From Octopus bimaculoides (taxonomy: Eukaryota): a stretch of DNA of 64,000 nucleotides. Of the stretch, positions 35,964 to 59,568 are shown piece after piece. A program made the position numbers and the translations under genes. A model generated the notes under the pieces. It worked only from the letters and a program-made list of their open reading frames with translations. It had not been told where the DNA came from and ran no database searches. The first letter of the stretch is position 1. Each line of letters opens with the position of its first letter. The DNA is taken from positions 974,266 to 1,038,265 of the forward strand of contig NC_068989.1 in NCBI RefSeq assembly GCF_001194135.2, in the 5' to 3' direction.

Positions 35964-36147
35964 ATGGTGAAGCCACCTAATGACTCCAGCACTTACAAGT
36001 TGGTCGTAGTAGGAGAAGGTGGTGTCGGTAAGTCGGCGCTCACTATCCAGTTCTTTCAGAAACTGTTTGTTCAGGATTATGACCCAACAATTGAGGATTC
36101 GTACATACAACACGAAGATGTTGATGGAATATGGTGTGTTTTGGACG
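35964..36147 (+). CDS. MRAS: MRAS coding exon 1: [61 protein letters not shown]
   Basis: ATG preceded by an in-frame TAG at 35937; P-loop and switch I; gtaagt donor at 36148 (phase 1). Confidence 0.97.
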
Positions 36148-38695
36148 GTAAGTGTCCCACTATGCAACTTCATACCCTTCTCTCTCTCTGTGTGCTTATT
36201 TCTTTCATCTTTTACATTCACACGCGCCTTCCCCCCCCCCTTTATTATCCATTCCACACTCTAAACAGCCTCATTTACTTTCTTTTTCTCTTCTCTGCAT
36301 CATGTCACACAAACACATTTTCATTTATTCCTCTTTCTTACTCCTTTTTCATGTCCACACTATCCCTTCTCTCTCTCTCTCTCTCTCATTCATATAACAT
36401 CCACCCACTTTCTTCTTTCCTTTCTCTTTCAACGTTATTCTTTCATTTTCGTTCTCTCCCCTCCCCACCACACTGCTTCCATTTTCCTTCACTTGCTCTC
36501 GTTGCCACACTCATTCATTTATTCTTTGTCTCTCTTGGATAATCCTTTCCGTTCACATGTGCAGCATGACTATTTTAAAAACACATAAACGCACCTATCT
36601 ATACACACACACAGGAAAAATATAGGAATTCTCGAACGAAGAACAACGAGGCCGCTCATAAATCTGTCCACTTGTCTGCGTAGTTCTTTGTGTCTGTGTG
36701 TGTTTATGTATGTATGTTGTATACTACAACCTTAAGTATATTTTTCAACTGTTGGTATTGAAGAGAGCCTATTGATAGAAAGATACAAGTCACTATCTAC
36801 ACATGTACCACTGTATGTGTGCTTGTATGTGTGTATTGTGTGTGTGTGTATACGCACTAGATATGTATCACAGATTCATTTCCTTTATACGCTCAAAAAA
36901 TAAAACCAGCAGAATAAAAAAAAAACGCACATTTACAGAAGCACACATACATAGATTCAAAGTCACACACACACACGCGTATACATACTGCTGTTGTTTC
37001 ATTGCTGTGCGCCTATTGAGGAGGACTAGACGCAAAAGATAAGGACAGATTAAGTCAAAATGTGTTATTAATCAACATGTTTAAGTCGTGTTAACAAATT
37101 CTAGGTGCCTCTCCACCACTGTTTCAACACACACACACACACACCTTGCATTCACGCAAAGATCTGGTACCACCAGATTAAGAATCCGCCTCACATGGTG
37201 GACTACTTGCAATACTACTTGTCTAAACCCATAGACTTATCGGTGAACCTCATAATTCCTTATATCAATACTGTATATATCTGATATGTTATCGATTACA
37301 AGGGAATTAAAAGCCCTTTATGTTGTATGTTCAAATATTGTTCATTCTTGTAGGATCGATAAAATAAAATGCCAGTCAATTACTGGGTGGGTTCAACAAG
37401 TCTGAGATTAAATTGAATTATTATAATAATAGATGACCGGCAAAACCGATGGAACTTGAAGACGTAAAAGGACGAAAAAAGACATTTAGTCTTCAGTGTT
37501 GCGCTTTTACCATTTTACGGCCGTATGTTGTATTAGTCATAATTATATTTTTTTAGGACTGAAACCAAAACTTCAAACTTATCAGATTAGAAAAATGGTA
37601 ATTTACAACGTTCAAGCACTGCTTGACGATGATATTGGTAACATAATAAGTAAAAGGAAATAACCTCCAATTAGGGTTATTGGTACACTTCATCGAAATG
37701 TGACATTCACAACATTTGAATAGCTGTGATCCATTGAAATAATCGACTCTAGTATATAATTGATACTTAGTTTTTCGATTCTGATAGGAATAAATGATGT
37801 TAGGTTTTTACTCTTGGCAGGATTTAAATTCAGGATCTTGAGAAGCCCCTATAATGTCATAAAACGTCGGTCCGTTGGCTCTTTACCGTCTGTGTGATTT
37901 ACAGACTTCTTAGAATTCTTTTTTTGGCAATATCACAAAGCGTTTGGGGAGTGAAAACGGGATGCTGTTTTGACCCGGGCTTTAGCAGCACAAATGAAGT
38001 GAAAGTAGATTTGATAGGGAATTGAAACCTTGTTACATACTCAGTTCGGTGTTACAAATTTGAGGTTATTTCGCTAATACATCTTTCATCTTCTTTATAA
38101 CAAGAAATTTTCACCTCAAATTGAGCCTTGTGCATGCCTAATATGTATTTTATCGACCCAGATGAGTTGAAGTTAGCCTCTTAGGATTTGAACCTCAACT
38201 GAACAGATATAAAAATTGTCGTGTTAAGTGGAATTTAACTCTAGAATCATGAAGGGCCAAACTGAATACATTTATTCTGAATCTCCACCACACACACATA
38301 AATTAAAAAAGAAAATCCAGGACTGCCGGAGACAATGAATGTGTGAATTATATCGTTTGTTACTTTCTCAATCGTTACAAAGGGGGTAAATGTAAGAATT
38401 TTAATCAGGAATCGAAACTGTTGCAAAGCGTATTCACTACAGAAGAACCTCATTACTTTCATGTTGGGAAAGACGGGAAATTGTTTTCGAGTTTATATCA
38501 TAATTGCAACGAAAGCTCAACCTATTGATTGCGTATAATTGTAGAAAACACAAGAAAACGGACAATGTGACAAAAAAAGTGTCTGATTAAATATCTTGGA
38601 GAAATTCGTTTCGTCCATCATCGACGTTACTCAGGTGTCATTTGGATTCGATTAAATCGACTAAATATGTGTGTGTGTGTGTGTGTGTGTACCTC

Positions 38696-38772
38696 CGGTC
38701 ATTTAAGTCTGACGAGTTGCCTATACGGCTAAGCGCTTTATAGGCGCGAAACCAGTGGTCACTCTCTGACCG
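38696..38772 (+). ncRNA. Type I hammerhead ribozyme in MRAS intron 1 (predicted cleavage after GUC at 38760)
   Basis: Core CTGACGA 38709-38715, GAAA 38748-38751, GTC 38758-38760. Stem I: agt/act plus internal loop plus cggtca/tgaccg. Stem II: G38716-C38747 closing pair plus gcctata/tataggc. Stem III: acc/ggt with agt loop. Confidence 0.85.
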
Positions 38773-41700
38773 CCAACAAACAACCTTCTATATATATACT
38801 TCTTTTGCAAATGTGTTGTGTGGTCGTGTGCTCAATATATTCTTCTTGTATTATGATTCGACCTACTACTTGATTGGTACCTTATTTTATTGATCCTTAG
38901 ATGGTTAAAAGGCAAACTTGAGCTCAGCAGTATTTGAACTCTAAAAGTAAAAGGTATTAACTGAGTCTTGCAGGGAATTTTGCCCGACGCTCTACCGATT
39001 TTGCCAATCCACCAGCTCAGATATTGTTCCTCTATTAATTACATGCGTGTATATATGACAATGCGTACAGATACCAATTTCTTTCTCGTATATAACTTGG
39101 ATATCATTACAGAAAAAAACACGCAATTCTGTTTGCCAGAGTTGAAAACATGACAACATTCAAAGACATCTTAAATCAACGAAAGCACTTGAAAGTGAGG
39201 GGTGTATGTCTGAATATGAATTTGGTTTCGGTTGTGAGTGTGTGAATGTACACTTGTCCATGTGTTTGTCCAAACCACATGTCTGGGATATTGAACCAAT
39301 TAGTTGCTAAAATATATTTCACGGCAAGCGTTTCGTTTTTCTTTTGATTGATGCTATTATATACGCTACCATAACCCTCAATTTTATTAGCTGATGGAGA
39401 AGAACAAGTTGTAAAGGCCAAAGTGCTGTGACGACTGGACATTCGTCATTGGTTCACACCACGTCACAGAATCTGGAATCGTTATTACTCTTAGGGATTT
39501 ACTTAATTCAGACGGTGACGAAGATTTGTCAGTCTTCTGTCCATGTTTTCTCCTCATTCGCCAGTCTATTTAAGTTACACGCACACAGACACACATTGAT
39601 TAAAGGCAATAACTTGTTGAAGTCGATGGCTGGTGGTGTTCAAAGCTTGTTTCACTTTTAGCTACAAGGCCAGCAATTTTCAGGAAAGGGGTTAGTCGAT
39701 ACAATTGACCAATACTCGACTGTCCAACATTTTATTGACCCTGAAAGGATAAAAAGCAAAGTTGACTTCGTCAGGATTGGAATTCAGAACGTAAAAAAAA
39801 AAAAAAAAANNNNNNNNNNAAAAACCCCGGAATAAATACAGCAAGACATTTTTTTCCCGATACTTCTATGATTTTACCATCACGTCATTCTTTTATAGTG
39901 TTAGAAGATGAAGGACATGAATTTCTTCATATTTGTCCTTTGTCCTTTAACATCTCTATAAATGTTCCTGTTGTTTAGCTTCAGATCAGCCGTGATTCAA
40001 AGGATTTACGATCAGAAGCAGTCAAGCTGTGACAATCTCGTCTGTGCATCCGGTACTGCATTAACCAATGAGTTTTTCCCTTTTAAGATAACACAGGGAA
40101 ATTGAATGAAGATTTGGCTGCTATTTCTAGTAATTCGATAATGTTATTTCTTTTTGAACACATACACGCACTATTTAAAGGAACGTATGGAGGGGTCATA
40201 TAAAGGTTTTCTCCTGAAGTGATCCAACTAACAGCCGTCTATTTACAATGCTGAATAAGTATCAGAAGGCATGCGAATATTAGTTCGTTGCATGAGCAGC
40301 AGATTTTGTAACGGTCATGCTTGTTTCGAATGGGAATCGAAACCGAACCGTTAAAAAAAAATGAGGGTTAACGAGTGCCATGTCTTGCTTTCCTAAAAGT
40401 ATTTATTATTGATATACGTATCTCATTAATGAAGATATACTAATGGATGTGCACATGACTAGCAAAAATCCACTAAAATATAAGTTATTACATACAGTAA
40501 CATAGGAAGATGTGGTACACGCTCGTGTGTGTGTGTGTGTATAAACGCGCCTTCATATACACCTAAGTACCTCGCATTCAACCACACAGAACTTGCGAAC
40601 ACTAATTCTTTTCTTTCAACCTGTTTAGCAACGAATAGTCTTCAGATTTCTCATCTTATCACGGTTTAATGCTTCTACTCTCAACCATCACCACCACCAC
40701 TACCGTGCGTGAACTCGGCTTTCCTAAGGTGTGACATGTGTCTTTCAAAAAAATTAATGGTGGCAAACTATTTCACCAGCATAGCTCTACACAAAATGTC
40801 ATTACTTCCATTCCCACTTTTTACCCTTCCATCTCCATATCTTCACAACCTGTTACTTTCTTCCTCATCTCCTGCCTCACCACCGTTCATACTATCCTTT
40901 GCTCGCCCATGAGGCTTGTCTTAATCAACTTCATTGTTTGAATTGGAAATCAGAACACAAAAGATTATGTCGGCGTGCCGTGAGACGAAGTGAATAAAGA
41001 TTAATGTCTCCAGTGGATCCCATTGTGGGACAATGTCTACCGATTAACATAGCATATTCTTCTAATGCTAATGGTTATCTTTGTTTACCACGTTATTTGA
41101 ATTCCCTGGTGCCTGAGCTCTTTCCTCACAAAGAACCAAAGCCTTATCTCTAGAATTTGGATAACAAAAATAAGTGTTACATGTTGAACATCAGAAAAGT
41201 ATTGCTTATATTTTTACCATTCTACTTATTGTACCCATATATGACAGAGTTGAGGTGGGCAGGCAAGCACAGGGAACCCCTAATACTGTCGGGAAAGGGT
41301 GTGCACTCTAATATACCCCCCCCCATTCCACGAAAATATTTTAAAATTAGACCAATTTTAGCGGTATTTTGAAGCCATATGAAATGGGTACTTAGACACA
41401 CCCTGAGAAGCAGTATTTAGTAATTAAATAACTGAGGTCATTTACTAATTATTAGCCATTAATTATAATATCTCAGTCAAAAGTTGAAACTTATGGCAGA
41501 CTCTAAACTTCAGTAATTAATACATTCTTTCTATGTGTAGACATTAAGCTTGGGACTGTATGAAATGTTTGGACTGCATCATTATCCTTTTATACAAATA
41601 CGTGTTTGTAAGCACAACCTTAAAACCCGTCGGAAGTTGAGTGTAACAAAACATATTTAGACATTACTCATGCCAGTGATAGATTAATTACTTCATAACA

Positions 41701-42584
41701 ATCAACCCCATTTTTAATTACCATGATATCACGGTAATGATATGGTAATTAAAAGTACATTTAAATAAACTTTATACTTTGTACTTTCCATGATGCGGTA
41801 TTTGTTATAGGATATGGCTTGTAAAAGCTGAGCTTTTCCTTATTATTTTGATCACAATTACAAATTTTTTCCAGTGAAATCATTGTTAGATGTTCATTTT
41901 CTATCCTTGCATATAGACTGGACAATTTGACAAGAGTATGTGAGCCAGGGGACTGTGCCAAGCTTTAATGTCTGAGTTGGCATGGTTTCTTTGGCTGGTG
42001 CTGCAAGGCAAGACCACCCCCCTCCACTGAGTAGGGGAATTAGTATTGAATGAGGTGGCTTTCTAGCAGCTGCTGAGAGGTTAAAGTATGACTAAAGGAA
42101 AGGCACAGATGTCTTACTGTGAGTGGGGTCACACGGCTACCCCAGTTGGAAAAGAAAGAGGATAGTGTCGAAGATGTTTCACGGCATAATCTAAAAGGGG
42201 GGCATGTAGAAGAAAGTAGGGGTATCAATCTGTTGGTTACTTTTTTCAGCAGGTTGTTTGTTCTTACATTGAATTCTTAGAAAGCAGATCAGTGTTTATC
42301 TAGCATTGTTGATTCTAACAAGGTTTTGTTTTTAAAATTTTCTCAGAGTGAAGTCACAGTATCGTGGTAGTAACACCATTATCATTTTAAATCATAGCTT
42401 TGTCAAAATCACTGGATATAATATTACACATGACACTCTATTATCATTTTAATCTAAAACAGAAGCTGGAATTCTTCTTATGTTAGGAGGCCACGTTGAA
42501 GCTAGCTGCCATCTGAGAAAGCCACCTTAATAAATCTTTAACATGTCTCAATCTCACTTATTGTATAAAATATTCATTCTTTTA

Positions 42585-42760
42585 GCTTTTGAGAGAGCAC
42601 ATTCAAAATGAGATAATTCAAAAATGGAGTGGCGTGAATGATGTGATCGCAGAATACTGAAAGTACAAATTCCACTGGGCTGGACATGTTGCAAGGTTCA
42701 CAGACAAGGTTCACATGCAGTTGTCAAGTGGTATCCAAGAGACTGGAAAAGGCCCCTTGC
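42585..42760 (+). mobile_element. Degenerate RTE-1-like LINE C-terminal fragment
   Basis: LREHIQNE..SGVNDVI..KFHWAGHVARFTD..V.KWYPRDWKRPL. Confidence 0.6.
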
Positions 42761-44040
42761 CTCCATGAGGGCCACACATAGCATTCCTGGTGTTTCATCC
42801 TTGAAACCATTTGCAGTAATGATTGCTTCAATTGATAAAGAAAAAATTTCCTATCCTTGTACAAAACCTTTAAAACAAATCGCAACAGCATAAAAATACC
42901 AACTTGATCTAAAATCATGGAATTATGTGACTAATATCAGTGTGCTGGATTGCAATGTTAAACTAATCTAAACTCACAAGCTACCAGTAAAATGCAAATA
43001 GTATTTTAGTATAAAATCACAAGATTGTGAAATAAAATCGTGACATCACATGGTTTTGCATCAATATTAAAAAAAAGATACCTCAATAAGTTTGAAGTGA
43101 TGCTTAGAAATTGTCTTGTAACTAGTCAAATGATTGGATCCAAATGAGAAAAGCCATCTCTCCGCCATAGAGTCTTGTACAGAAATAAAGTAAATTCTTA
43201 GTAAATAGTTGATTGGACCACAGTAAATGAACTTATGTGACCTGAGAGTCAGAGGTCATATCTTGCACTGTGACTCATCCAAAGCTGTTCCTTTTCACAG
43301 TGCCTTCTTGACTTGTGCCTCTTAAGCCAGAGTGAGAGAGAAGCTTATGTCAAGTGATTTACCAAACTACTGAATCAGAGAGAAAGCTGAAATTCCTGAC
43401 ACTATTAAGAGTTTGCCTCTAATTATCTCTTAAAAAGTTTGACCCTGGGTGGAACAACTGACCCATTTTCTACCCTCAGCAGATATCCATGAGTTGTCTG
43501 TAAATGTTCTCTTTCTCACTGATTTTGAAAGAAGTGCTTATGTTTACAAAGTAGTTGACCCTCTGTGACATAGTTTTCATTTTCTGTTGCAAGCAAACTA
43601 CATCAGGTTTGTTATATTTGTACTTGGTGAAAGTTTTAATGGAAATGCTTCACCATTATTCCTTGCAATAATATTTATGTATCTATTCAGAAACAGGAAT
43701 TCACTACATTTATCCTTGCCCATTCTTTCTTATGGACAGCATTGTAGATTGTCCGTTTTGATGGGATTAAAAAGCTTGTAAATAGATGAAAGGAAGTCAT
43801 AGAAAATCAGGGAAAGTACATTGATGATTAAATTTCAATTAAATATAACATTTGATCACTTGTTTTCTTTATTCAAAATTCAGACAGAACTTATGGGATG
43901 ACCTGATAGAAGACACTTGGCCATGGTATCATGCAGTGGGACTGAACCTGAAACCACATGATTGCAAAAGGAATGTTTTAATGACAGCCATGCTTTGACC
44001 ACTGTCAATATAGTCTGTGTGATATGAGAGATGTCTGTGC

Positions 44041-44072
<32 letters not shown>

Positions 44073-46181
44073 NNNNNNNNNNNNNNNNNNNNNNNNNNNN
44101 NNNNNNNNNNNNNNNNNNNNNTATATGAGAGAGAGAGAGAGAGAGGGCACAGCTCACATGTATGATATGTAAAAGATATCTGTGGTATATATGTGTGTGT
44201 GTGTGTTTAATATAAATGCACACACACACACATGTATGTGTATCTGGTGTTTATGACCCCAAGTTAACATCTAGTTGTTTCTACCCCTTTGCTATTAACT
44301 GATTCATGAGTCACAGTACCATTCAGATCCTTTGTTTCCAAACAATGGACACAATGCACCACTGCTTGATCACATGGTCTGCACCATTCTCCTCCATCAA
44401 TGCTTTGTCTGATTCACTCACCATTTCCGATTCTGTTATTGTCTGAAGCTAGAATACCATTAATATTTTTGTTCCTAAAGGGTAATTTCTTAAAAATGTT
44501 GCCCCAATCTTTGTGAATAATTTAATGCTGTATGCTGCCACTGTTGATGAGTGAGTCTTTAGAATAAGGCTTTGGGACTTAATAAATCAGAGCCCTTTTC
44601 TAATTGGTTGTGATCTGTTTAGGTTGCTGGCCCCTTGTAAATATATGATTATTCCAGTGATGAAAGATGAAGTCCATGAAGTGAGTAGTTTTTGCCAGAA
44701 GATTTTTATGTCAGAATCGGTCAAATGACTTGCTAAAAAGAGGGCATCAACACTGTTTTCACGAAATTTCTCATGATTGAAGGCAGCCTGGTGAGTAGGT
44801 CTCCAGTTGACAACAGAAGAATTGTGAAATTGGTAAAACTTGAAGTTTTTGAAGAAGGCAGCATGAAAACTTTTTTTATTTGTGAGTTAATTACAAGAAG
44901 ACAACAGCTCTAAGCTAGAGAAAAAAAAATCTTCTTTGGTGTATTAGACTAAATAAGAATTATAATTACATCTTATTAGTTGATATGATGCCTTACTTCA
45001 GTGAATCTCTCCAACTTTTTTGGACATTCACAAATACTCCAATGTTTCTGAAGGGAAATAGCAGCATTTTGTATGAATTTTGTGTCCAAATTTTGGTTTT
45101 CATGGAATTGGTGCAGTTGCTTGCATTTGTGTTATAGAGGAAAGGCGCTAAAGTATGCCTCCTACAGAGAGAGAGAGAGAGATTTAGTAGTTTATTGTGC
45201 CAAGATCAAATCTTCTCTTTTCCTTGACAGTAGAATAGTAAGTTGTCACAGATTTCGATGTTCCAACCAACAAAGAGAAAATATTCCTTTTATCTGTGTA
45301 TGTGCACACCGCTTATCACACTAGGAGACCCTGGTGTAGTACTTCCTTCCTATTTACGACCATAAATACTGGCATTTGACTCTTTACTCTGTCTGTCTTT
45401 CATCCTCCCTTTCTCCCTCTTTCTCTCCATACTCTTCTGTCATGTTTTCAAGTAGGAAAGTTGACCAACATGCCTCCAGATTAGTTCAGCCAATTAACCT
45501 ACAATTACCACCTTCGTTACCAAAAGCAAACCACTACTGCTGCTGTTGTTGTTGTTGTTGTTGTTCAGGTCATAATAACTATTGTCATGTTTTGTCAAGA
45601 AACAAAACTAAAAGCATTATTTTTTTGGTCTTCCATAGCAGAACCTCCAAGAAAGACTCTTCAATATGTTTCAGGTTGATATCTTAATATTGATCTGTTT
45701 GTCACAATACTACAACGTCCCAGTAAAGTTCTTCCTTTATTAACCTCTGAGGAGTGAAAAGCTCAGTTGATTTCAGTAGAATTTGAACTTCGGACATAGA
45801 GGTATGAAGCTAATTATTGTAAGACTACAGTTTCTACAAGATCACAACCTCCATCATTTTCATGTTAAAAAACATTTAAAACTATGTTAATGTTAAATTT
45901 TGTCAATCAACAAGGCTATCCAACAAGATGTGTGACTCTAGCATTTTGGATGGGCTAAACTTCAGTCACATCTGGGAATCCTTGCATCTCCTGTTATCAA
46001 ATGTTCTTTTGCTCCTGATCAGCCCTGCCTGTCATGGCCATCCTGTCTTTACAGACTTCATAGCCAAAAAATCAAATAATGTCACATGAAGCAGCATTGA
46101 ATGTGATAAGACCTTTTTGCTGTGGAGATTATCCTGGGAGTAAATTCTTCACCTAGACATGTGTAGAAACACATTTTATGA

Positions 46182-46270
46182 GTTGTGAATGATGTCATTG
46201 GGTCATACAATGCATGCATTTCTGTGTTGTTATGCTTCATCAACTACTGTCCAATGACCTCATTCACAGC
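46182..46270. repeat. Imperfect hairpin with 20-nt arms (gttgtgaatgatgtcattgg / ccaatgacctcattcacagc)
   Basis: 18 of 20 positions are Watson-Crick complementary; extra inner pairing catacaa/ttgttatg. Confidence 0.75.
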
Positions 46271-47139
46271 CCCTCAAAATGTCTCCATACATGATCAGGC
46301 AGAGGATTTTCTCTTAGGTCTATCTCTGCAGGTCTATATTGCAGATGTGGTTGTAGAAGACTTGGCTGTGGAACCGAAAGAAGTGATTCACTTTTGCTCA
46401 GCTTGTTTAGAAGAGCAACAGCCATACCTTTCTTAAACATCTTACCATTATAACAGATAGGAAAATGAACTGAGGAAGCCTTTATGCAGTTACTTGCCCT
46501 GCTAATGATAGCAACAAAATCTCTCACAAATCCCACCTAACCCTATACAAAAAGAACACATTGAATGGTGTAGTCCAAGATATACCATGTCATGGTTGGA
46601 ATGTCTTTAACCATTGGTCTCACTTGATCACAGTTGATCTTGGGCTACAAGACTAGATAGAAAATGGTTGATATAGTTAGTGCAAAATAGTTTTGTTTCA
46701 TCAGAATTCATCAGAAGAGGCCAGCGATTTAATACAGGGTTTGGAAGACTAAGGGGAAAATTGTTGATTTGTTTTGACTTGAAATATAAAATGTGAGGTT
46801 CTCCAAAATACAATAACAGCACAAATAATCTACTAACTTAGCCAAAAAAGCAAAGTTTTCCCTGAAACAGGTGGAAGTTCAGCTTACAGTCTTTTAGCTT
46901 TGCAATGCATTGTGGGTTTCTAATATCTGGTCTGATGCAAGAGAATGATACCTTCGCTAGAGTACGTTTTTATTAGAGTTACAGCAGGTTGCTTATTTGC
47001 ATGTAAAACAGCAGATTTATACACATGTTAATCATTATTAACAATATTAACTTATAAAAATGAGACAAAGTCATTAAGCAGATATGGCAGAAAGAATGCC
47101 AGCAGGTTTATGTATACATACATACATGCGAGCGTGCGT

Positions 47140-47460
47140 GTAAAAGTGCATGGCTTAGCGGTTAGAGTATTCAACTCATAATCGTAAAGTCAGGGGTTCA
47201 ATTCCTGGCAGTGTGTTGTGTCTTCAATCAAGACACTTTATTCCACATTACTCCAGTCCACTTAGCTGGAAAAAATGAGTTGTACCTGTAATTCAAAAGG
47301 GGCCAATCCTGTCACATTTTGTGTCATGCTGAATCTCCCTGAGAACTGTGTTAAGGGTATGCGTGTCTGTGGAGTGCTCAGCCACTTGCACATTAATTTC
47401 AGGCTGTTCTATTAGTTGGATCAATTAGAACCCTCGTCATTGTAACCAATGGAGAGCCAG
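47140..47460 (+). mobile_element. tRNA-derived SINE family C copy
   Basis: Head tggcttagcggttagag..ggttcaattcc then caagacactttattccac..ccagtccact; reverse copies at ~48930-49395 and ~59790-59945. Confidence 0.7.
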
Positions 47461-48929
47461 TTATCAAATAGCATCACTTTATTTCTGTATCCCAAATACT
47501 TTTTTGTTATAATGTTGTTGTATATCCTCATGTCATCTCTTATTAAACAGACTTCTGGTCAAAACCATTCCTGTCTCATCTCCATGTTTTCAGACATAGC
47601 ATAGTATGCAATGTGTTCTTTATTTAAAAGACAGTGGAGTGTATTTTGAGGGAAATTTGACTACTATTTCTAGCAAGTCTGATGATCACATAGAAGCTTA
47701 CCCTTCAGTTTGTTGTTTAATGTTGGGGAAAAAAGGGTGTTTCACTAGTTCTAATCTTTCACCGTTTTCTCTGTTAGCCTCAGTTGCCTGCAGAATGTAC
47801 CCGAAAAGAAAAGTTAGATCAGACATGTGTTTGTGTGGTGACAGCCATAATGTCAGTAGCAGTGAGTACTCAGCCACCTAAGTTTCTACAAACACAGACA
47901 GATGACAAAAAAACAAAAAAAAAAACAGGCATAATTACATAATTATATGCACAGTCACAATTTGAAAAACGAAAGAAAATAAGTGGTGGAAATATGTATT
48001 CAAATGATAACAACAACAACAACAACAACAACAGCAATTCACCTTTTATTTGTGTTGCAAACCAAAAGGAAACGATGGACAGGAGTCAGTTGCAGGCAAG
48101 ACGAAAAAAACCTAGAAGGAGAACATTACAAAAGAGAGTACCTCCTTGCTTGAGGATTTTTACCAAAGAAAAGGGCAAAGAGCAAAGTGACATGTTATTA
48201 TAAAAAAAATCAGTGAATTTGGCGAGACCCTGTTAATTGAGGCCAGTTAAAAGTTCCTTGAAAGAGTTAAGGCATATTGAAGAATATACCTCTTAAGGCT
48301 GAAGAGACAAAAAAAGCCAGGTTGTCCACAAGATAGTGATACTGTATATAGGCAGGAGAACATCAATGCTATTGTGAACCCTTGGCCTCTAGGCACAGCT
48401 GCAGCACAGTTTGAGCAAGTTGTGAGCCCTGAGGAGATTGAGGACGGATAATAAGCTTTGTTTCATCAAAACTGGTCTTTCACATAAACAGTGACAATCT
48501 TTTAAAATAGATTTTCTCCATCTGTTATTGTAGTTCCTGTTATTTACTCTCAAAGAATGTTATTGTTTTCCTGTTTTTGTTTTTGTTGTCTTCAATAACT
48601 GACCACCCCTCTGCCTCTCAACAATTCAAAACATGGCTGCTATTTTTTCCTCCTGCTTTTGTAGGATTTCCTGAACTCCTAGATATTCTCAAGAAGCTTT
48701 TGATTCTCATTGCTAACCCAACCCTTCTCTCTCTCACTTGCATAACTCTTTTCTATTTTATGCCTGAAATAAACTATTCTTATATCTTAGTACTGACCCA
48801 CAAGAAACAGTAGTTAAATATCCCTCAGCTTACTATTTTAAAACCAAAGGTCTTATTAAATAATGTGGTCCTGGATCCACTGACCAATGGTAATTAATGG
48901 TTACCATTGGTAGATTTCATAGCCAACCA

Positions 48930-49395
48930 ACGACTCTACTCAGACACTGAGATGTGTCCTGTTTCTTGTATGATTCAGGAGAGCCAGCTGAAACTGTTCG
49001 GCCATGCTGCTTGGTTTTCTGAGTAAGACCCTGCTTATTTTGTCCTCTTCACTGAAGATGGCTTGTGTTGGTTGACCACATGGCCATGGCAGGTGAGGGA
49101 GAGATAGGGACTGACTGGGACTCTGCCTCAACAGATCATCCAAGGGGACCCAGGAATATAACAACAAATGGTGGATGTAAGCAATGCACTGCAGTAGCAC
49201 GTTTCCCCAGAGCTGACCTAATTCCACTGACATTGACTTTGAATTACGGGTACAACTTGATTTCATCGGCTGAGTGGACTGAAGCAACATGAAATAAAGT
49301 GTCTTGCTCAGGGACACAACGCATCTCTGGGAATTGAACTCATGATGTTATGATTATGAACCAAACACCCTAACCACTTAGCTGCGTGCCATCAC
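48930..49395 (-). mobile_element. SINE family C copy
   Basis: gtggactgaagcaacatgaaataaagtgtcttgctcagggacacaac...ccctaaccacttagc, the reverse of the 47140 head. Confidence 0.7.
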
Positions 49396-49587
49396 ATCAT
49401 TTGCTACATGTGGCCTTGTAAGCTATTCTGTGTCAGTGTAAACATGTTGTTTTTCCATGTGTGGGAGGGTGTCTGTTATTTTTCATAATTTTGCTGCCCA
49501 TATTTTAGGCAAATAAATCGTTTTCAGTTGTTTGTATTTAAAAGTGTATTTTCTCAAGTGTGTCATTTTATGTGTGTGTACATATTA

Positions 49588-49637
<50 letters not shown>

Positions 49638-50161
49638 NNNNNNNNNNNNNNNNNNNNNNNNNNNNNNNNNNNNNNNNNNNNNNNNNNNNNNNNNNNNNNN
49701 NNNNNNNNNNNNNNNNNNNNNNNNNNNNNNNNNNNNNNNNNNNNNNNNNNNNNNNNNNNNNNNNNNNNNNNNNNNNNNNNNNNNNNNNNNNNNNNNNNNN
49801 NNNNNNNNNNNNNNNNNNNNNNNNNNNNNNNNNNNNNNNNNNNNNNNNNNNNNNNNNNNNNNNNNNNNNNNNNNNNNNNNNNNNNNNNNNNNNNNNNNNN
49901 NNNNNNNNNNNNNNNNNNNNNNNNNNNNNNNNNNNNNNNNNNNNNNNNNNNNNNNNNNNNNNNNNNNNNNNNNNNNNNNNNNNNNNNNNNNNNNNGGTGG
50001 TGGTGGTGGTGGTGGGCTGCATTTCACAGGTTCTTCTCTGTAAATGCTAATTCTTAATTGTCTTTGTGTGAGTGTGAGTGTCTTTCTGTTTGTTTCTCTG
50101 TATCGGTATATGAGAGAGGGAGAGAGAGAGAGAGTGCATTTGTGTGCGTGTGTGTGTATGG

Positions 50162-50204
<43 letters not shown>

Positions 50205-50959
50205 CTGTTAAGTACCAATGTGTGTATGTAACAGCTGTTGTGTTTCTGTGCTCTTGTCACTTCTCGACATGTGTCTGTGAATCCCAATGAATTTCACCAT
50301 TCTTCATTGTGTCTAATTATATTTATCACATTATATCAATAAATATGTATGGGGGAGGGGGGTTTGTTTTAATTCCTTCTCTTTGTGTCTGTAGGCATGG
50401 ATTTCCTTCTCTATATATATGTGTGTGTGTATGCATTTTATGTATTTTTATTAATATTAATAGATCTATTCTGTATGCATTTGTGTGTAAATGCATATTA
50501 ATCTATGCATGTGTGTGTATGTATGTATGCATGCATGCATATATATATATTTGTCACAAATATCATCATCATCATCATCATCATCAATTTTAATGTCTAT
50601 TTTTTTTTCCATGCCAGCGTGGGTTAGATGGCTTTCGTAATATCTTGTTGCTCACTGGCGTTCATCACCATCTGCCACAACACAATTATAAAACAAACTC
50701 GGCCACTCTGCAGTTGTGTTTGTCTGTGATATTTAGGTTTTGATCTGTGGATATTCCTCTTAACTGCAATTACTACTTTAAAGCATAGACTCACTGTATC
50801 TTATTGTGCCATTAATTCTAAAGAGATTCTTTGTGTTTGCATTAAAGATTCCTCTCTACTTTTGCAACACCTCTTACTTAGTCTTATGGCTTTTCTTTGG
50901 TTGGTTGTCTCTGCTGTGTTTTGCAGAATCTCCTTACTTTTTGTGTGGGAAATGGTTTA

Positions 50960-51300
50960 CCCTTCCTGTGCAGGTACGGCTGTTGTGTGGTAAGAAGTTT
51001 GCTTCTTAACCACATGGTCCTGGGTTCAGTCCCACAGCTTGACACCATGGGCAAGTGTCTTCTACTATAGTCCTGGCTGACCAACACCTTGTGAGTGAGT
51101 GGACTTAGGGGACAGAGATTAAAGAGGCAAGTCACATGTGTGTGTGTGTGTGTTCCTCTTCCTCCCCCCCCACTGCTGCTTGGCTATTGGTGTTGGTGTA
51201 CTCATGTCCTGTAACTTAGCAGTTTGGCAAAAGAGACTGATAGCATAAGTATCAGGCTTAAAAAATATAGACTGGGGTTGCTTCATTTGCTGCCCCAGCA
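50960..51300 (+). mobile_element. SINE family A copy
   Basis: tRNA-like head (gtggtaag..ggttcagtccc) then ttgggcaagtgtcttctactatag; other copies at ~43865, ~54975 and ~56380. Confidence 0.75.
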
Positions 51301-51375
51301 TGGCCACAGTGTAATGACTGAAACAAGGAAAGGATAAAGACTTCTATTCTTCTTTCTACTTTGAATGTGTGTTTA

Positions 51376-51439
51376 TATTGATGTAATTAAATTTATTTGT
51401 GTAATTAAATTTATTGATGTAATTAAATTTATTTGTGTA
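51376..51439. repeat. 18-bp tandem repeat with alternating variants (TGATGTAATTAAATTTAT / TTGTGTAATTAAATTTAT)
   Basis: Read directly; A-B-A-b order. Confidence 0.85.
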
Positions 51440-51964
51440 TATGCAGTGTATGCAATATTGGTGCTTCTGTTGTTGTTGTTATTGGTCGGTCCGAACGCTG
51501 TGCCTGCACCATGTGTGTGTATATGTATGTTGGTCTGTATGTACTAATGTATGTTATTATATGTAAAAATGATGTATATGTCAGCAAGCGTATGTGTATG
51601 TGTGTCTGTGTAAGATTGTATGTCTGTATGCATATATATTGTGTGTGTATGTATTGTATGTATGCATACATGTATGTGTGTATGTGTGTGTGTGTGAAGC
51701 AAGTGTGTTTTATGGTTGCAATGAGCCATGACTCACTTGCGTATTTGGTTGAAATTCAACAAATGAGATATTGGTGTTTCTTTGTCTGCAGCTGAATGGA
51801 AGATGAGTGCAGCTTCATTGTTGCATGAGCAGCGTGTTGAATGGCAGAATGGATGCAGTGGGAAACAGACTTACATATACACACAGCTAAACACACACAC
51901 ACATGCACACACATGCAAACAACTGTATGCATACGTGCATTTATATATTCGTCTGTCTGTTAGT

Positions 51965-51969
51965 TGAAG

Positions 51970-52002
<33 letters not shown>

Positions 52003-52218
52003 TTAACGTCCTCCTTCCATGCTGTCATGGGTTGGATGGGTTGACAGGAGCTGGCAAGGCAAGGGGCTGCAGCAGGTTCCATTGTCTGTTTTGGCATGCT
52101 TTCTACGGCTGGATGCCCTTCCTAATGCCAACCACTTTACAGAGTGGGCTGGGTGCTTTTTTATGGGGCACCAACACCATACTTTTTATGTTTTAGGATA
52201 TCTATATACACACACACG

Positions 52219-52259
<41 letters not shown>

Positions 52260-52345
52260 CGTCCACCTTTCTATGCTTGCATGGGTGGCACAGAGTTTAT
52301 TGAGGCACATTTACTACAGCTGGATGCCCTTCCTGTTGCCAAACT
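51965..52345 (-). mobile_element. Two adjacent family D copies
   Basis: Each begins with (cat)n and contains ctggatgcccttcct..gccaa. Confidence 0.7.
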
Positions 52346-52729
52346 TTATTAGTTTGGTCATGGGGCTGCAGCAAGGCAGTTTGTGAAGAGGTAGCGGAAG
52401 AGCTCAACTGAGCCAACGGTGTTTCTTAAATTGATGCTAAGTGGAGGAATCCTTGAAGATCAATGGTCAGGATCCCCAAGCTCTATCAAGAGAGTAACTA
52501 CAATGCATCCATAGGGGTGGTGGCCATGGTTGTGTGATCAGCTAATGAAGATTCATTATGACTGAAGCTCCGAATTCAAATTCATAATAATGGAATTGGA
52601 TGGTGACAAGAGAGTCACAGGAATCTACGAAAGCAGCATGACCAAAAAGATCACCTCTTGTGATCTCGACTCCTTTAACATGCAACACTACCCTCATGTT
52701 GTGTTCATATTTCAATCCATGTCATGAAG

Positions 52730-52950
52730 CCAGTGAGCTGGCAGAAACGTTAGCACGCCGGGCGAAATGCTTTGCGGTATTTCATCTGCTGTTATGTTCT
52801 GTGTTCAAATTCCAGTGAGGTCGACTTTGCCTTTCATCCTTTCGGGGTTGATTAAATAAGTACCAGTTATGCACTGGGGTCAATGTAATCAACTGAATCC
52901 CTTTTTCTGTCCTTGTTTGTCCCCTCTATGTTTAGCCCCCTGTGAGTGAT
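52730..52950 (+). mobile_element. SINE family B copy (gagctggcagaaacgttagcacgccgggcgaaatgc...)
   Basis: Related copies at ~3690 (+), ~30780 (+, partial), ~38850 (-), ~39650 (-), ~55330 (-) and 33695-33885 (-). Confidence 0.75.
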
Positions 52951-52991
52951 AAAGAAATAAATACATACATGTCATACTCTCACCTCATTCT

Positions 52992-53089
52992 AGTTGTTTG
53001 TTTATTCTATTTGTTTGTTCTATTTGTTTGTTCTATTTGTTTGTTCTATTTGTTTGTTCTATTTGTGTGTTCTATTTGTTTGTTCTATT
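52992..53089. repeat. 13-bp minisatellite (TTCTATTTGTTTG) x ~6.5
   Basis: Units start at 53005, 53018, 53031, 53044, 53057 (variant), 53070 and 53083 (partial). Confidence 0.9.
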
Positions 53090-53339
53090 ACACACGTACC
53101 GGCTCAGTTGAAACTCTGCCTTTAGCTAATCATCATTAGGCAGCTGCAACATCCTTGCATTTTAATCTGCAAATCAAGTTGGAGGTTTAAACAGCAACTC
53201 AACCTGAACACTAATTGCATTTACCTTACATCACCAGATGCAATATTAATTGAGTTTTATAAATATATATCTTAGATAACTTAAATTAGTTTTGGCTGCT
53301 ATCAGCCCAGGCCATGACTAACTCAATAGCACCACCTGG

Positions 53340-54170
53340 AAAAGTCTCTTAATTAATTAATTCAGAACACCATGGACCACTCAAGCAGAGAGTTGTTGTT
53401 GGCTGAGGCGTATCCAAGTGTGGGTGGCTTATCCAGTATTTCCTGGAGGAATTTGTCCAGGTACCTTTTGAAAGTTGTGGGGTCTTTTTTTACTTTAATC
53501 TCTTTCAGGATAACATTAAAAGAACAGGACCGTTTGCAGTGAAGAAATTATGTTGCAACGTTCTTATGTGATGTGATCTCGACCTTTGTAGGGGACGTAT
53601 TGCACGGGGGGGGGCTAGTCTTGGGTGAATTGTAAACATAAAACCGATATCATCTGGATAATATTGGTGGAATATTTTCCACATGGTACAAATAATGTAT
53701 CACTCATAGCAGTGTTGCAGAGAGTAGAGTTTCAGCTGTTTAAGTCAAATCCAATAATAAAGTCCCATCATGCCATTTATTTTTTTAGTGGTTGATCTTT
53801 GTGGCACTTTGATCCTCATTATATCTTTTTTTTTTGTAGGGGGGACCACAGTGGGCAGCAGTATTCATGGTGGGGGCCTAGCAAATGTTGAGAAAAGAAG
53901 GATGATGGTTTCATGATCCCTAGATTGAAAAGTTCTGAGGATTCATGAGCACATTCTGCGGGTAACATCGACTTTTTTGTTGACGTACAACACTTCAGCT
54001 AAGGTTGCTGTCAACAGTTACACCTAAGCCTTTGATATACGCACATTATATCTGTCTGTTTGAAACTCTCTTCTTTACACTTTGACTGCATATTTCAAAC
54101 TTCCATTTGCTCTCAGAATCAACTTCTCTTGTTCACAGCTGAGTCTGGCTCCCTTCATTGTTTCTGGTGG
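53340..54170 (-). mobile_element. CR1/L2-group LINE ORF2 3' fragment
   Basis: Minus-strand translation ..GM.GL.YW..LKQLKLYSLQ..YIICTMWKIF..NGPVLFNV..FKRYLDKFLQEILDKP..GY..NNSL, typical of the CR1 ORF2 C-terminus. Confidence 0.75.
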
Positions 54171-55730
54171 GTTTAAGTCTACAAAGAAATGAAAATTAAA
54201 TGAGTTACCATCAACTGTTTAAGTGTGTATACATTTTTTGAGGGGGAGGGGACACCATATATACATACATACACACATGCACAGCACATACACACACACA
54301 TGGAGATGTGTGTAAATATATAGACACACAGACATACACACACGTGCGCACATATGTCTATATTTGTGGATAGTGAAATAGATAGATTGATAATATATAA
54401 TTTGGAGAAGTGATATATAGAGTAATGGGTGGGGGAAGGGTAAGTGTAAGTGCAGCGAAGGGATAGAGAGATGGTGTTAGATGTGTGGGGGTGATGGAAA
54501 AGGGGTGATGAATATCATTGGAAGATTTAAAGAAAGAGGATGAGTGGGGGGGGGGAGATGGATAAATGAATAGTTTATTCATTTGAGCAGTGGTGGGGAA
54601 GGAGTGAGGAGGAGGAGGAGGAGGAGGAGATAGTGTAAAGATAGGGGCAGGGGAGGAAGGAGAAAAGGGCTTCATTAGATTGCTGGGTGAAAGTGTGGGG
54701 GGTGGGGGAGCATAAGGATAAGTAAATAGCGGAGAAGTTGAATATGGGTGGCTGAGTTGACTGAAGGCAGGAAGTGATGGAGACAGAAAAGAGATGGAGA
54801 TTNNNNNNNNNNNNNNNNNNNNNNNNNNNNNNNNNNNNNNNNNNNNNNNNNNNNNNNNNNNNNNNNNNNNNNNNNNNNNNNNNNNNNNNNNNNNNNNNNN
54901 NNNNNNNNNNNNNNNNNNNNNNNNNAGTTGTGTTAAGATGTTGTCTCTAAAAGTGATGAAGAAGTCTGAGGAAAAATAAGCCAAGAAAAGTGCAGGTTGA
55001 GAAGCTCACTTTGCAACCACGTGGTTTTCAAGTTCAATCCCACTCCACAGCTACACCTTGGGTAAGTGTCTTTGCCTGTAGTCCCCCTCTTGGGCCGACT
55101 AATGTTGTGTGAGCGAGGAGGAATCTGATTGATGGAAACTGTGTGGAAGCCCATCGTTTCTTTTAGCTTTTATCTTTCACTTGTTTTAGTCATTAGACTG
55201 TGGCTATGCTGGGGCACCACCTTGAAGGGTTTTAGTCAAATAAATCAACCCCAGGACTTTATTTTTTTAAGACTGGTTCTTTGTCTATTGGGTCACAAGG
55301 TCAGCAATTTTTAGGGCATGAAGTTAGGTGATGGCATTGACAGAAGTACTTGACTTTGCTACATTTTTATTCTGTGAAATTCTGGAGGGAAGAAAGGCAA
55401 AGTCGACCTCCATGGGATTTGAACTCAAAATGTTAAGAACTGGAAGAAATTCTGCAAAGCAATTTATGCTGTAAAGATTCTGCCAGTGTGTTGTCCTTAT
55501 TATAATGATCGTTTCTAACCTAGGCAGAAGGTTAACAATTTTGCAGGGTGGAGGATTAAGGGTTAGGGATTGGCCCCCAGTCCTTCACTGGTCCTTTGAT
55601 TCATTGAACCCTGGAGGGAAGATGTCAACATTGATCTTGACACAGTTTGAACTTAAAAACAGAAAGAGACAAGGCAAATGTCACAAGGCCTTTCTCTGAT
55701 GTCAGTCCTTCACCCTTTAACAACAACAAC

Positions 55731-55771
<41 letters not shown>

Positions 55772-55909
55772 TAATAATAATAATAATAATAATAAGCCTT
55801 TCTATTATAGGCACAATGCCTGAAATTTTAGGGGAGGGGGTTAAGTTGATTACAACGACCCCAGCATGTAACTGGTACTTAAATTATCAACCTCGAAAGG
55901 TTCTTAGTC

Positions 55910-56050
55910 CCAGGTCAGAGCTATGATCAAAGGCATTCCAACTGTGACCATCCTGTCTTTCTCCAGGTTCACATCCAATGCGTCCTTTTTGAAGAGAGTT
56001 GTGATTTGAGAGAGATATCTTAGCTGCTATTTCTAGCGAGTAACTAACCA
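55910..56050. repeat. Interspersed repeat family E (gatcaaaggcattcca..gaccatcc..tgatttgagagagat..gctgctatttctag)
   Basis: Related copies at ~21190, 30910-31290 (interrupted by the MITE), ~39970, ~46580, ~47560 and ~63140. Confidence 0.65.
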
Positions 56051-57194: not shown

Positions 57195-57230
<36 letters not shown>

Positions 57231-57722: not shown

Positions 57723-57762
<40 letters not shown>

Positions 57763-59538: not shown

Positions 59539-59568
59539 TAAATTGTTATATTCTTTATTTACTTCCAG

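What the first reader, a model, noticed from the sequence alone, without database searches (positions are those of the whole stretch)
38696..38772. Complete type I hammerhead ribozyme in the sense strand of MRAS intron 1
Seen: all core nucleotides are present in order (C3-A9 = CTGACGA 38709-38715; G10.1-C11.1 pair 38716/38747; GAAA 38748-38751; cleavage triplet GUC 38758-38760). Stem I = agt/act, a 4x3 internal loop, then cggtca/tgaccg. Stem II = gcctata/tataggc, extendable. Stem III = acc/ggt. Known: type I hammerheads occur in Penelope-like elements and retrozymes, stem I internal loops mediate the tertiary contact needed for fast cleavage, and conserved intronic hammerheads exist in amniote genes such as RECK. 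Inference: this solitary ribozyme, about 2.5 kb into a 23.4-kb intron, could cut the nascent M-Ras transcript. That could act as a co-transcriptional attenuator or splicing-competition switch for a Ras-family gene. I know of no description of this in cephalopods.
Basis: partly seen in the sequence, partly recalled or inferred. Interest (0 to 1): 0.9.

Follow-up and report, generated by a model that had tools for sequence, protein, structure and literature searches.

The report
Relic hammerhead ribozyme in octopus MRAS intron
The octopus M-Ras intron really does contain a complete hammerhead ribozyme motif, but it looks like a leftover of a Penelope-like retroelement insertion, evolves neutrally and is already destroyed in Octopus vulgaris, so it is an ordinary genomic passenger and not a gene switch.

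Summary
Every coordinate in the finding checks out. Window 38696-38772 (+) carries a complete type I hammerhead (HHR) motif. It lies on the sense strand, 2.5 kb into the 23,421-nt intron after the ATG exon of Octopus bimaculoides MRAS.

It is unlikely to be chance. In 2,000 dinucleotide shuffles of the window, one reached -20 kcal/mol in the HHR-constrained fold and none paired a good fold with G10.1-C11.1 and C17.

It is not a conserved regulator:
- O. bimaculoides and O. sinensis are 95% identical across the motif, the same as the surrounding intron.
- O. vulgaris has a ~29-nt deletion that removes A6-A9 and most of helix II.
- No counterpart was found in Argonauta hians MRAS.

The active fold is poor. 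It sits 5-7 kcal/mol above the MFE. Helix III is marginal as a hairpin (-0.3) but strong as an intermolecular duplex (-10.8), as in dimer-type metazoan HHRs.

The same descriptor found five more HHR motifs in about 317 kb of octopod DNA, against about 0.1 expected. They share a long helix II and a palindromic helix III, and three of the five, like two PLE 3' ends, stop at a (TA)n tract. The MRAS motif sits between (TA)n(TG)n and (TA)n.

Best reading: a ~100-nt 5'-truncated Penelope-like element or retrozyme relic. It is a new member of a known kind and of low interest.

The parts
38696..38772 (+). Complete type I hammerhead ribozyme motif (helix I open)
   Evidence: Sequence read. All 21 proposed pairs are standard pairs. 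HHR-constrained fold is -20.4 to -21.0 kcal/mol. It is an outlier against shuffles.
38709..38715 (+). Core C3-A9 (CUGACGA)
   Evidence: Deleted from A6 onward in O. vulgaris.
38716..38747 (+). Helix II: G10.1-C11.1, U-G, bulged U at 38718, 7 bp gcctata/tataggc, then a distal extension and loop
   Evidence: pair probability 0.93-0.96 for the 7-bp part. All O. bimaculoides / O. sinensis differences fall here. In O. sinensis the distal part is a perfect 10-bp stem.
38748..38760 (+). G12-A14, then helix III (A15.1-U16.1, C-G, C-G with loop AGU), then cleavage-site C17 at 38760
   Evidence: The hairpin is worth only -0.3 kcal/mol, whereas two copies of ACCAGUGGU pair in trans at -10.8 kcal/mol.
38668..38689 (.). 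(TG)11 microsatellite next to the 5' side. In O. sinensis and O. vulgaris it is preceded by (TA)n.
38789..38798 (.). (TA)5 microsatellite 29 nt after the cleavage site. Longer in O. vulgaris, lost in O. sinensis.
   Evidence: Only 1.4% of window positions have a (TA)>=4 run starting within 40 nt downstream.
38690..38788 (+). Inferred ~100-nt insertion unit: a 5'-truncated retroelement 3' end that carries the HHR, lying between the two microsatellites
   Evidence: Inference, by analogy with the PLE 3' ends at L002:~45700-45850(-), L006:~13215-13330 and L011:42017-42160.
35964..36147 (+). MRAS exon with the start codon ([24 protein letters not shown]...)
36148..59568 (+). MRAS intron of 23,421 nt (GT...AG) that contains the motif
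59569..59722 (+). Next MRAS exon ([10 protein letters not shown]...ILRVKD)

Best explanation
The motif is a solitary relic of a hammerhead-bearing retroelement. Most likely it is the ~100-nt 3' end of a 5'-truncated Penelope-like element (PLE), or of a PLE-mobilised retrozyme-like element. It would have inserted into a (TA)n microsatellite in the MRAS intron before O. bimaculoides split from the O. vulgaris/O. sinensis lineage.

It is transcribed passively as part of the MRAS pre-mRNA. Like other metazoan type I and PLE hammerheads, it has a long helix II and a short, near-palindromic helix III that is stable only when two copies pair. As a lone monomer it should therefore cleave weakly or not at all.

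It has no selected role in MRAS expression. It drifts neutrally and has already been destroyed by a deletion in O. vulgaris.

Shown here: motif anatomy, gene context, excess over chance, neutral divergence, the O. vulgaris deletion, an unstable active fold, and the abundance of similar motifs in octopod DNA. Inferred: the PLE/retrozyme origin of this particular copy, and low catalytic activity.
For: 1. Real motif, beyond chance.

2. Hammerheads are common in octopod DNA. The same descriptor applied to about 317 kb of non-redundant octopod sequence finds five motifs at -13 kcal/mol or lower:
- window 38709
- L001:44774, in A. hians MRAS intron 2, also on the sense strand
- L006:16097
- L008:19989
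- L011:42017, which has a degenerate inverted twin at L011:38422
About 0.1 would be expected from the shuffle rate of 41 hits per 2,000 windows.

3. Shared architecture. The other motifs have a long helix II (L006, L011), a palindromic helix III or loop (UGCA, CAGCUG, CACGUG), and an element end at (TA)n 30-90 nt after the cleavage site. The MRAS motif has a 9-12-bp helix II with an unpaired U near its 5' end, the near-palindrome ACCAGUGGU, and (TA)n 29 nt downstream. [quoted passage not shown]

4. PLEs with RT plus GIY-YIG domains are present in these genomes, including one inside the O. sinensis MRAS intron. They end in (TA)n. PLE insertion bias for microsatellites is published (PMC8557442).

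5. Timing fits. A PLE expansion at about 56 My predates the O. vulgaris / O. bimaculoides split at 13-33 My (PMC13282606).

6. No selection is visible. Identity is 95%, equal to the intron background, and O. vulgaris has the deletion.

7. Weak monomer. The HHR fold is -20.4 (O. bimaculoides) and -21.9 (O. sinensis) against MFEs of -27.0 and -27.3. The helix III hairpin is -0.3 against -10.8 for the trans duplex. Single PLE min-HHR motifs showed no detectable cleavage in vitro (PMC4209133).
Against: Family membership therefore rests on architecture and context, not on sequence homology.

No PLE coding remnant lies next to it in the window.

Helix III (3 bp plus a 3-nt loop, with a central G.G mismatch in the dimer) is not a perfect palindrome. 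Stem I, with a 6-bp distal helix beyond an internal loop, is longer than the 4-5 bp typical of PLE min-HHRs.

The upstream repeat is (TG)n in O. bimaculoides. (TA)n is seen there only in the sister species.

With about 5% neutral divergence and only three species, the comparison has little power to detect weak purifying selection.
Confidence: 0.7

Rival explanations
1. One reading: a functional cis-acting ribozyme that cuts nascent MRAS pre-mRNA and acts as an attenuator or a switch that competes with splicing.
For: The core is complete and canonical, with a GUC cleavage triplet, on the sense strand of the intron. It is retained intact in O. sinensis. Conserved intronic hammerheads exist in amniotes (own knowledge; cited in PMC7229834 reference 22).
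Against: Conservation equals the intron background. The four differences show no compensatory pattern. O. vulgaris has deleted the core. No Argonauta ortholog was found. The active fold is disfavoured by 5-7 kcal/mol and helix III is marginal. Hammerhead motifs occur about once per 50-65 kb in octopod DNA, so one in the sense strand of a 23-kb intron is expected by chance of insertion. From own knowledge: slow ribozymes placed in introns do not disturb splicing because the exons stay tethered to Pol II (Dye et al. 2006), and only fast-cleaving variants do (Fong et al. 2009).
Confidence: 0.05
2. A chance match. A long inverted repeat (helix II) and a second hairpin happen to be flanked by the 11 core nucleotides, with no ribozyme ancestry.
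For: Shuffles reach this quality in roughly 1 of 1,000 windows, which implies tens of chance motifs per genome. No paralogous copy was found. Rfam models do not match. The distal stem I strand tgaccg pairs better with the nearby tggtca than with cggtca.
Against: No shuffle combined a good fold with G10.1-C11.1 and C17. Genuine-looking HHRs are about 50 times more frequent in octopod DNA than chance predicts, so the prior favours a real HHR. Flanking by (TA)n on both sides is found at only 0.2-3% of positions. Helix II with an unpaired 5' nucleotide and a near-palindromic helix III match the PLE type.
Confidence: 0.1
3. A retroelement-derived hammerhead that is still catalytically competent as a monomer and cuts some MRAS pre-mRNA, but without any selected consequence (active but neutral).
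For: All core positions and the three helices are intact in O. bimaculoides and O. sinensis. The 6-bp distal stem I and the long helix II give the scaffold some stability.
Against: The competing MFE structure and marginal helix III argue against it. Single PLE-type motifs were inactive in vitro (PMC4209133).
Confidence: 0.15

Closest known systems
Minimal/type I hammerheads of Penelope-like elements (Cervera & de la Pena 2014, PMC4209133)
   Same: Type I topology and a canonical core. Helix II is larger than usual and has an unpaired nucleotide near its 5' end. Helix III is short, (near-)palindromic and stable only as a dimer. Most copies occur as single dispersed motifs from truncated elements. 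The motif sits next to a microsatellite target.
   Different: Helix III here is 3 bp plus a 3-nt loop, where the PLE type has 1 bp plus an even-length palindromic loop. Stem I has an internal loop and a 6-bp distal helix. There is no adjacent PLE ORF or pLTR, and no sequence-related copy was found.
Non-LTR retrozymes with classical type I hammerheads (mussel, coral, newt; PMC7229834; bioRxiv 10.64898/2026.07.22.740005)
   Same: A type I HHR with a short helix III that works in multimeric transcripts. The group is invertebrate and includes molluscs. A derivation from PLE pLTRs has been proposed.
   Different: Retrozymes are tandem repeats of about 150-400 bp, whereas this is one copy. In vertebrates retrozymes are reported as depleted from introns, whereas this copy is intronic and on the sense strand.
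Ultraconserved intronic hammerheads of amniotes (HH9 in RECK, HH10)
   Same: A hammerhead on the sense strand of an intron in a protein-coding gene.
   Different: Those are conserved across amniotes and fold stably as monomers with tertiary contacts (own knowledge). This one is restricted to Octopus, evolves neutrally, is deleted in O. vulgaris, and has a disfavoured active fold.
Rfam Hammerhead_1 (RF00163), as annotated in the giant squid genome (235 loci, PMC6962438)
   Same: Type I hammerhead loci in a cephalopod genome.
   Different: This motif does not reach any Rfam hammerhead model, even at E<=10. Nor do the other octopod min-HHRs.

Membership tests
Hammerhead ribozyme, type I | Conserved core: C3 U4 G5 A6 N7 G8 A9, G12 A13 A14, A15.1-U16.1, H17 | tested here: met
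   CUGACGA at 38709-15, GAA at 38748-50, A38751-U38759, C38760.
Hammerhead ribozyme, type I | Three helices around the core, with helix I open and helices II and III closed | tested here: met
   All 21 pairs are standard. The constrained fold is -20.4 to -21.0 kcal/mol, and 1 of 2,000 shuffles reaches -20. However, the fold is 6.6 kcal/mol above the MFE.
Hammerhead ribozyme, type I | Match to the curated covariance model (Rfam Hammerhead_1 and related models) | tested here: inconclusive
   No hit at gathering score or at E<=10. Canonical octopod min-HHRs used as positive controls also fail.
Hammerhead ribozyme, type I | Site-specific self-cleavage 3' of position 17 | not testable with these tools
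   Needs an in vitro transcription and cleavage assay, or mapping of RNA ends.
Hammerhead ribozyme, type I | Helix I / helix II tertiary contact that allows fast cleavage at physiological Mg2+ | not tested
   Geometry is unfavourable, with loop II 9-12 bp from the core and the stem I internal loop 3 bp from it. This is inference only.
PLE-associated hammerhead (min-HHR type) | Long helix II with an unpaired nucleotide at its 5' end | tested here: met
   Helix II is 9 bp plus an extension, with U38718 unpaired (U.C mismatch in O. sinensis). Criterion taken from PMC4209133.
PLE-associated hammerhead (min-HHR type) | Very short helix III with a palindromic loop, so that it is active as a dimer | tested here: inconclusive
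   ACCAGUGGU is a near-palindrome with a central G.G. The hairpin is -0.3 and the trans duplex -10.8 kcal/mol. It is not the 1-bp stem with an even-length palindromic loop seen at L001, L006 and L011.
PLE-associated hammerhead (min-HHR type) | Lies in the pLTR or 3' end of an element that encodes RT plus a GIY-YIG endonuclease | tested here: not met
   tblastn with PLE proteins finds no PLE coding remnant anywhere in the window. A severe 5' truncation would explain this but is inferred.
PLE-associated hammerhead (min-HHR type) | Element end abuts a microsatellite target such as (TA)n | tested here: met
   (TA)n lies 29 nt after the cleavage site and (TA)n(TG)n lies upstream. The background frequency of such flanking is 0.2-3% of positions. 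Other octopod HHR and PLE ends show the same arrangement.
PLE-associated hammerhead (min-HHR type) | Belongs to a multi-copy consensus family in the genome | tested here: inconclusive
   No related copy in about 450 kb of octopod DNA or in JGI metagenomes. The whole genome could not be searched with these tools.
Non-LTR retrozyme | Tandem repeats of about 150-400 bp, each with a type I HHR | tested here: not met
   There is a single copy. No direct repeat of the region occurs in the window.
Conserved intronic regulatory hammerhead (HH9/HH10-like) | Purifying selection: conserved above the intron background across species, with compensatory changes in the stems | tested here: not met
   Identity is 95%, equal to background. 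The changes are not compensatory and the core is deleted in O. vulgaris. The motif is absent from the A. hians locus.

The most novel reading that the evidence does not exclude
The relic has been co-opted in the O. bimaculoides and O. sinensis lineages as an active, sense-strand intronic ribozyme that trims or attenuates MRAS pre-mRNA. O. vulgaris would then be a natural knockout. That would make this an unusually clean system for testing what an intronic hammerhead does to its host gene.
Probability: 0.04. Interest if true: 0.6.

Novelty: new member of a known kind. Interest (0 to 1): 0.22.

Why it matters
If the regulatory reading were true, this would be a first example of a ribozyme controlling a Ras-family gene in an invertebrate. 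The evidence instead points to one of many retroelement-derived hammerheads scattered through octopod genomes, at roughly one per 50-65 kb in the DNA sampled here.

Three things remain useful:
- It documents PLE-type hammerheads in octopods, including a U3-A8 core variant, which Rfam models miss.
- The intact O. sinensis allele and the deleted O. vulgaris allele form a ready-made natural control for anyone testing whether intronic sense-strand hammerheads affect host transcripts.
- It is a caution that a perfect hammerhead core in an intron is not evidence of function in PLE-rich genomes.

Tried and rejected
- **Rfam scans.** I ran the window at gathering score, 271 nt at E<=10, and the O. sinensis ortholog. 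None gave a hammerhead hit. I do not count this as evidence against the motif, because the control min-HHRs also fail.
- **Simple regex and contiguous-helix descriptors.** These also pick up poor chance matches at 33679, 47679 and 25999. I replaced them with constrained-fold scoring.
- **Search for paralogs of 38300-39100.** The window and all loci contain only a SINE-like repeat at 38860-39017. Nothing matches the HHR segment.
- **JGI metagenome scan.** The pattern CTGANGAG...GCGAAACCAGTGGTCAC gave 0 hits.
- **More octopod orthologs through spurious ORFs.** I looked up ORFs near the motif in the protein collection, and none is there. That route was dropped.
- **Argonauta ortholog.** blastn finds no alignable counterpart, so an empty-site test was not possible.
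- **PLE ORFs next to the motif.** None occurs in the window.
- **U3-A8 core descriptor.** It is too noisy in AT-rich DNA to use genome-wide. I kept only the two instances that sit at PLE 3' ends.
- **L007:2552.** It scores -15.0 under wider span limits, but helix II is multi-branched, so I judged it a chance match.
- **A custom covariance model from the other octopod HHRs.** I considered this and did not build it. With four independent sequences it would only restate the descriptor test.

Full report
**1. Observation**

- Core and cleavage site: CTGACGA at 38709-38715, G38716 paired with C38747, GAAA at 38748-38751, GTC at 38758-38760.
- Stem I: 3 bp (agt/act), then a 4x3 internal loop, then 6 bp (cggtca/tgaccg).
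- Helix II: G-C, U-G, an unpaired U38718, then 7 perfect pairs and a distal extension.
- Helix III: A-U, C-G, C-G around the loop AGU.

All 21 pairs are standard.

A tblastn with human M-Ras and direct translation place the MRAS exons on the + strand. They lie at 35964-36147 (ATG exon), 59569-59722, about 60908-61010 and about 62074-62154. The intron is 36148-59568, 23,421 nt, and the motif begins 2,548 nt into it on the sense strand.

The assembled protein is identical over its 173 residues to the Octopus M-Ras cluster member P0121. The window is 100% identical to O. bimaculoides chromosome CM046609.1.

**2. Is it more than chance?**

A loose regex is not informative, since it finds 2 matches against 0.98 expected. 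I therefore scored every core match (CTGANGA, then a closing pair, GAAA, A15.1-U16.1, H17 and the 1.1-2.1 pair). Each was folded with the core kept unpaired and the three junction pairs enforced.

This site scores -21.0 kcal/mol and the next best in the window scores -2.1. Results from dinucleotide-preserving shuffles of the window:

| Run | At or below -21 | At or below -20 | At or below -15 |
|---|---|---|---|
| 400 shuffles | 2 | – | 3 |
| 2,000 shuffles | 1 | 1 | 14 |

No shuffle hit that also had G10.1-C11.1 and C17 reached -13. The motif is thus about a 1-in-1,000 event per window. That is significant for this window, but it still allows tens of chance motifs genome-wide.

Rfam finds no hammerhead at gathering score or at E<=10. 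It also misses two canonical-looking octopod min-HHRs at E<=10 (L001:44774; L008:19989). The negative result says nothing here.

**3. Folding**

| Species | HHR-constrained fold (kcal/mol) | MFE (kcal/mol) |
|---|---|---|
| O. bimaculoides | -20.4 | -27.0 |
| O. sinensis | -21.9 | -27.3 |

- The MFE keeps helix II but replaces stems I and III with two other hairpins. One is the 7-bp GUGGUCA/UGACCGC, which buries C17.
- Pair probabilities are about 0.08 for distal stem I, about 0.015 for proximal stem I and 0.001 for helix III.
- Helix III alone is worth -0.3 kcal/mol as a hairpin. Two copies of ACCAGUGGU pair in trans at -10.8 kcal/mol, giving 8 bp with a central G.G.

This is the behaviour described for most metazoan type I hammerheads. 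Their unstable helix III prevents efficient monomer cleavage, and activity needs a second copy nearby (PMC4209133). This copy is solitary.

**4. Comparative evidence**

The MRAS loci of O. sinensis (L002), O. vulgaris (L003) and Argonauta hians (L001) were retrieved.

- **O. sinensis** keeps the whole motif. It has 3 substitutions and 1 single-base deletion, all inside helix II or loop II. None is compensatory. The O. sinensis version has a perfect 10-bp distal stem where O. bimaculoides has C.U and G.U.
- **O. vulgaris** has a deletion of about 29 nt. It reads CTG|AGGCGCGAAA, so A6-A9 and most of helix II (its 5' strand and loop) are gone and the ribozyme is destroyed.
- **A. hians** shows no alignable counterpart.

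A 100-nt sliding comparison over 3.6 kb of intron gives 90-98% substitution identity between O. bimaculoides and O. sinensis almost everywhere. The window that contains the motif gives 95%, which is the background value.

There is therefore no sign of purifying selection, and there is one clear loss. With only about 5% divergence, the intact core in O. sinensis is expected under neutrality (0.95^13 is about 0.5).

**5. What it is**

No paralog of 38690-38830 exists in the roughly 450 kb of octopod DNA held, or in JGI metagenomes. A SINE-like repeat starts about 90 nt downstream, at 38860-39017.

The same descriptor finds further hammerheads in octopod DNA:

| Locus | Species and context | Score (kcal/mol) | Helix III or loop |
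|---|---|---|---|
| L001:44774-44806 | A. hians MRAS intron 2, sense strand | -13.0 | loop UGCA |
| L006:16097-16143 | O. sinensis | -14.5 | CAGCUG |
| L008:19989-20021 | O. bimaculoides | -15.7 | – |
| L011:42017-42090 | O. sinensis | -18.2 | CACGUG |
| L011:38422-38350 | O. sinensis, degenerate inverted twin of the above | -8.2 | – |

Including the MRAS motif, that is five motifs at -13 or lower in about 317 kb of non-redundant sequence, against about 0.1 expected from the shuffle rate. Part of the sample was chosen for containing PLEs. The unbiased part (window plus L001) still gives 2 in 127 kb.

Hammerheads are therefore abundant in octopods. A sense-strand copy in a 23-kb intron is not remarkable.

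PLE copies with RT and a GIY-YIG endonuclease (with the CxxC inside the GIY-YIG core) were mapped at four places: L002:46628-48368(-), L005, L006:10088-12280 and L007. The first of these lies inside the O. sinensis MRAS intron. Two of these PLE 3' ends (L002, L006) and three of the other HHR elements terminate at a (TA)n tract 30-150 nt after the ribozyme.

The MRAS motif is bracketed in the same way. (TA)n(TG)n lies upstream, with the (TA)n part seen in O. sinensis and O. vulgaris. (TA)n lies 29 nt downstream, seen in O. bimaculoides and O. vulgaris. Only 1.4% of window positions have a (TA)>=4 run within 40 nt downstream, and 0.2-3% have runs on both sides.

Published descriptions match:
[quoted passage not shown] They occur mostly as single motifs from truncated PLEs (PMC4209133).
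- PLEs show insertion bias for microsatellites (PMC8557442).
- A PLE expansion in Octopus about 56 My ago predates the O. vulgaris / O. bimaculoides split at 13-33 My (PMC13282606).

**6. Mechanism and verdict**

The most likely account (about 0.7) is a ~100-nt, 5'-truncated 3' end of a hammerhead-bearing PLE, or of a PLE-mobilised retrozyme-like element. It inserted into a (TA)n tract in the common ancestor of the three Octopus species. It is now transcribed passively within the MRAS pre-mRNA, is poorly active as a monomer, and is decaying neutrally.

Rivals:
- Still active as a monomer but neutral: about 0.15.
- Pure chance: about 0.10.
- A selected regulator of MRAS: about 0.05.

From my own knowledge, not tested here: slow ribozymes in introns do not disturb splicing because exons remain tethered to Pol II. 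Only fast-cleaving variants abort processing.

**7. Comparison with known systems and novelty**

The motif works like, and most resembles, PLE and classical metazoan type I dimer-type hammerheads.

Membership by sequence homology or by an adjacent PLE ORF was not shown. Those rows are recorded as not met or inconclusive.

It is not a retrozyme array, because there is no tandem repeat. It is not an HH9/HH10-like conserved intronic ribozyme, because there is no conservation.

Hammerhead_1 loci have already been counted in a cephalopod genome (235 in the giant squid, PMC6962438).

The finding is a new member of a known kind, and interest is low (0.22). The O. sinensis and O. vulgaris alleles do offer a neat natural control if anyone wishes to test the effects of an intronic hammerhead.

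Noticed in passing
L001:44774-44806 (+), Argonauta hians MRAS locus: A canonical PLE-type min-hammerhead: stem I UGUUGAC/GUCAGCA, core CUGAUGA, helix II GAGGC/GCCUU, GAAA, a 1-bp helix III with the palindromic loop UGCA, and A17. It lies on the sense strand of MRAS intron 2, about 430 nt upstream of the [11 protein letters not shown] exon. It is an independent insertion and is not orthologous to the Octopus motif.
   Followed up: partly
L002:46628-48368 (-), O. sinensis MRAS intron: A Penelope-like element copy with an RT domain (FDVVNLYSNIP, YLDDCF) followed by a GIY-YIG endonuclease that has CxxC inside the core. No PLE coding match is found in the O. bimaculoides window or in the O. vulgaris locus, so it looks like a lineage-specific insertion. 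Its 3' UTR has tandem repeats of about 70 nt (about L002:46150-46470) and ends at a long (TA)n tract.
   Followed up: partly
L002:~45790-45850 (-) and L006:~13215-13275 (+): The 3' ends of two related PLE copies carry a min-hammerhead with the core covariation U3-A8 in place of C3-G8: UUGAUAA, helix II GGUUC/GAACC (L002; AGUUC/GAACC in L006), GAAA, helix III A-CAUG-U. The same variant was reported for the Cercyon PLE of Schistosoma mansoni (PMC4209133). The AU-rich stem I makes the assignment tentative.
   Followed up: partly
L006:16097-16143 (+); L008:19989-20021 (+); L011:42017-42090 (+) and L011:38422-38350 (-): Further canonical type I hammerhead motifs in O. sinensis and O. bimaculoides DNA. 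Two have palindromic helix III sequences (CAGCUG, CACGUG). The L011 pair are inverted copies about 3.6 kb apart that share about 190 nt of flank. None is detected by Rfam where this was tested (L008).
   Followed up: partly
window 38860-39017: A SINE-like dispersed repeat, with a tRNA-like segment ending ...gcccgacgctctaccgatt. It has many 63-79% identical copies in both orientations in the window and in the orthologous loci, for example window 52728-52878, 39707-39796 and 55347-55436.
   Followed up: no
window 33679-33745, 47679-47743, 25999-26050: Weak hammerhead-like core matches (CTGANGA...GAAA...). They have poor or absent helices, with constrained fold energies of 0 or higher. I judged them chance matches.
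   Followed up: yes
window 3773-3829, 13993-14711, 19895-20010, 28715-28746, 39810-39819, 44073-44121, 49638-49995, 54803-54925, 56751-57079, 57763-58095: Ten runs of N (assembly gaps), 2,126 bases in all. Seven of them lie inside the MRAS intron. Any repeat or second hammerhead copy hidden in these gaps would have been missed.
   Followed up: no
L003:~12764 (O. vulgaris), aligned to window 38712-38741: The deletion of about 29 nt that destroys the hammerhead removes most of the helix II inverted repeat (its 5' strand and loop), which would fit replication slippage across a hairpin. O. vulgaris also has a C-to-T change in helix III (ACC to ATC).
   Followed up: partly
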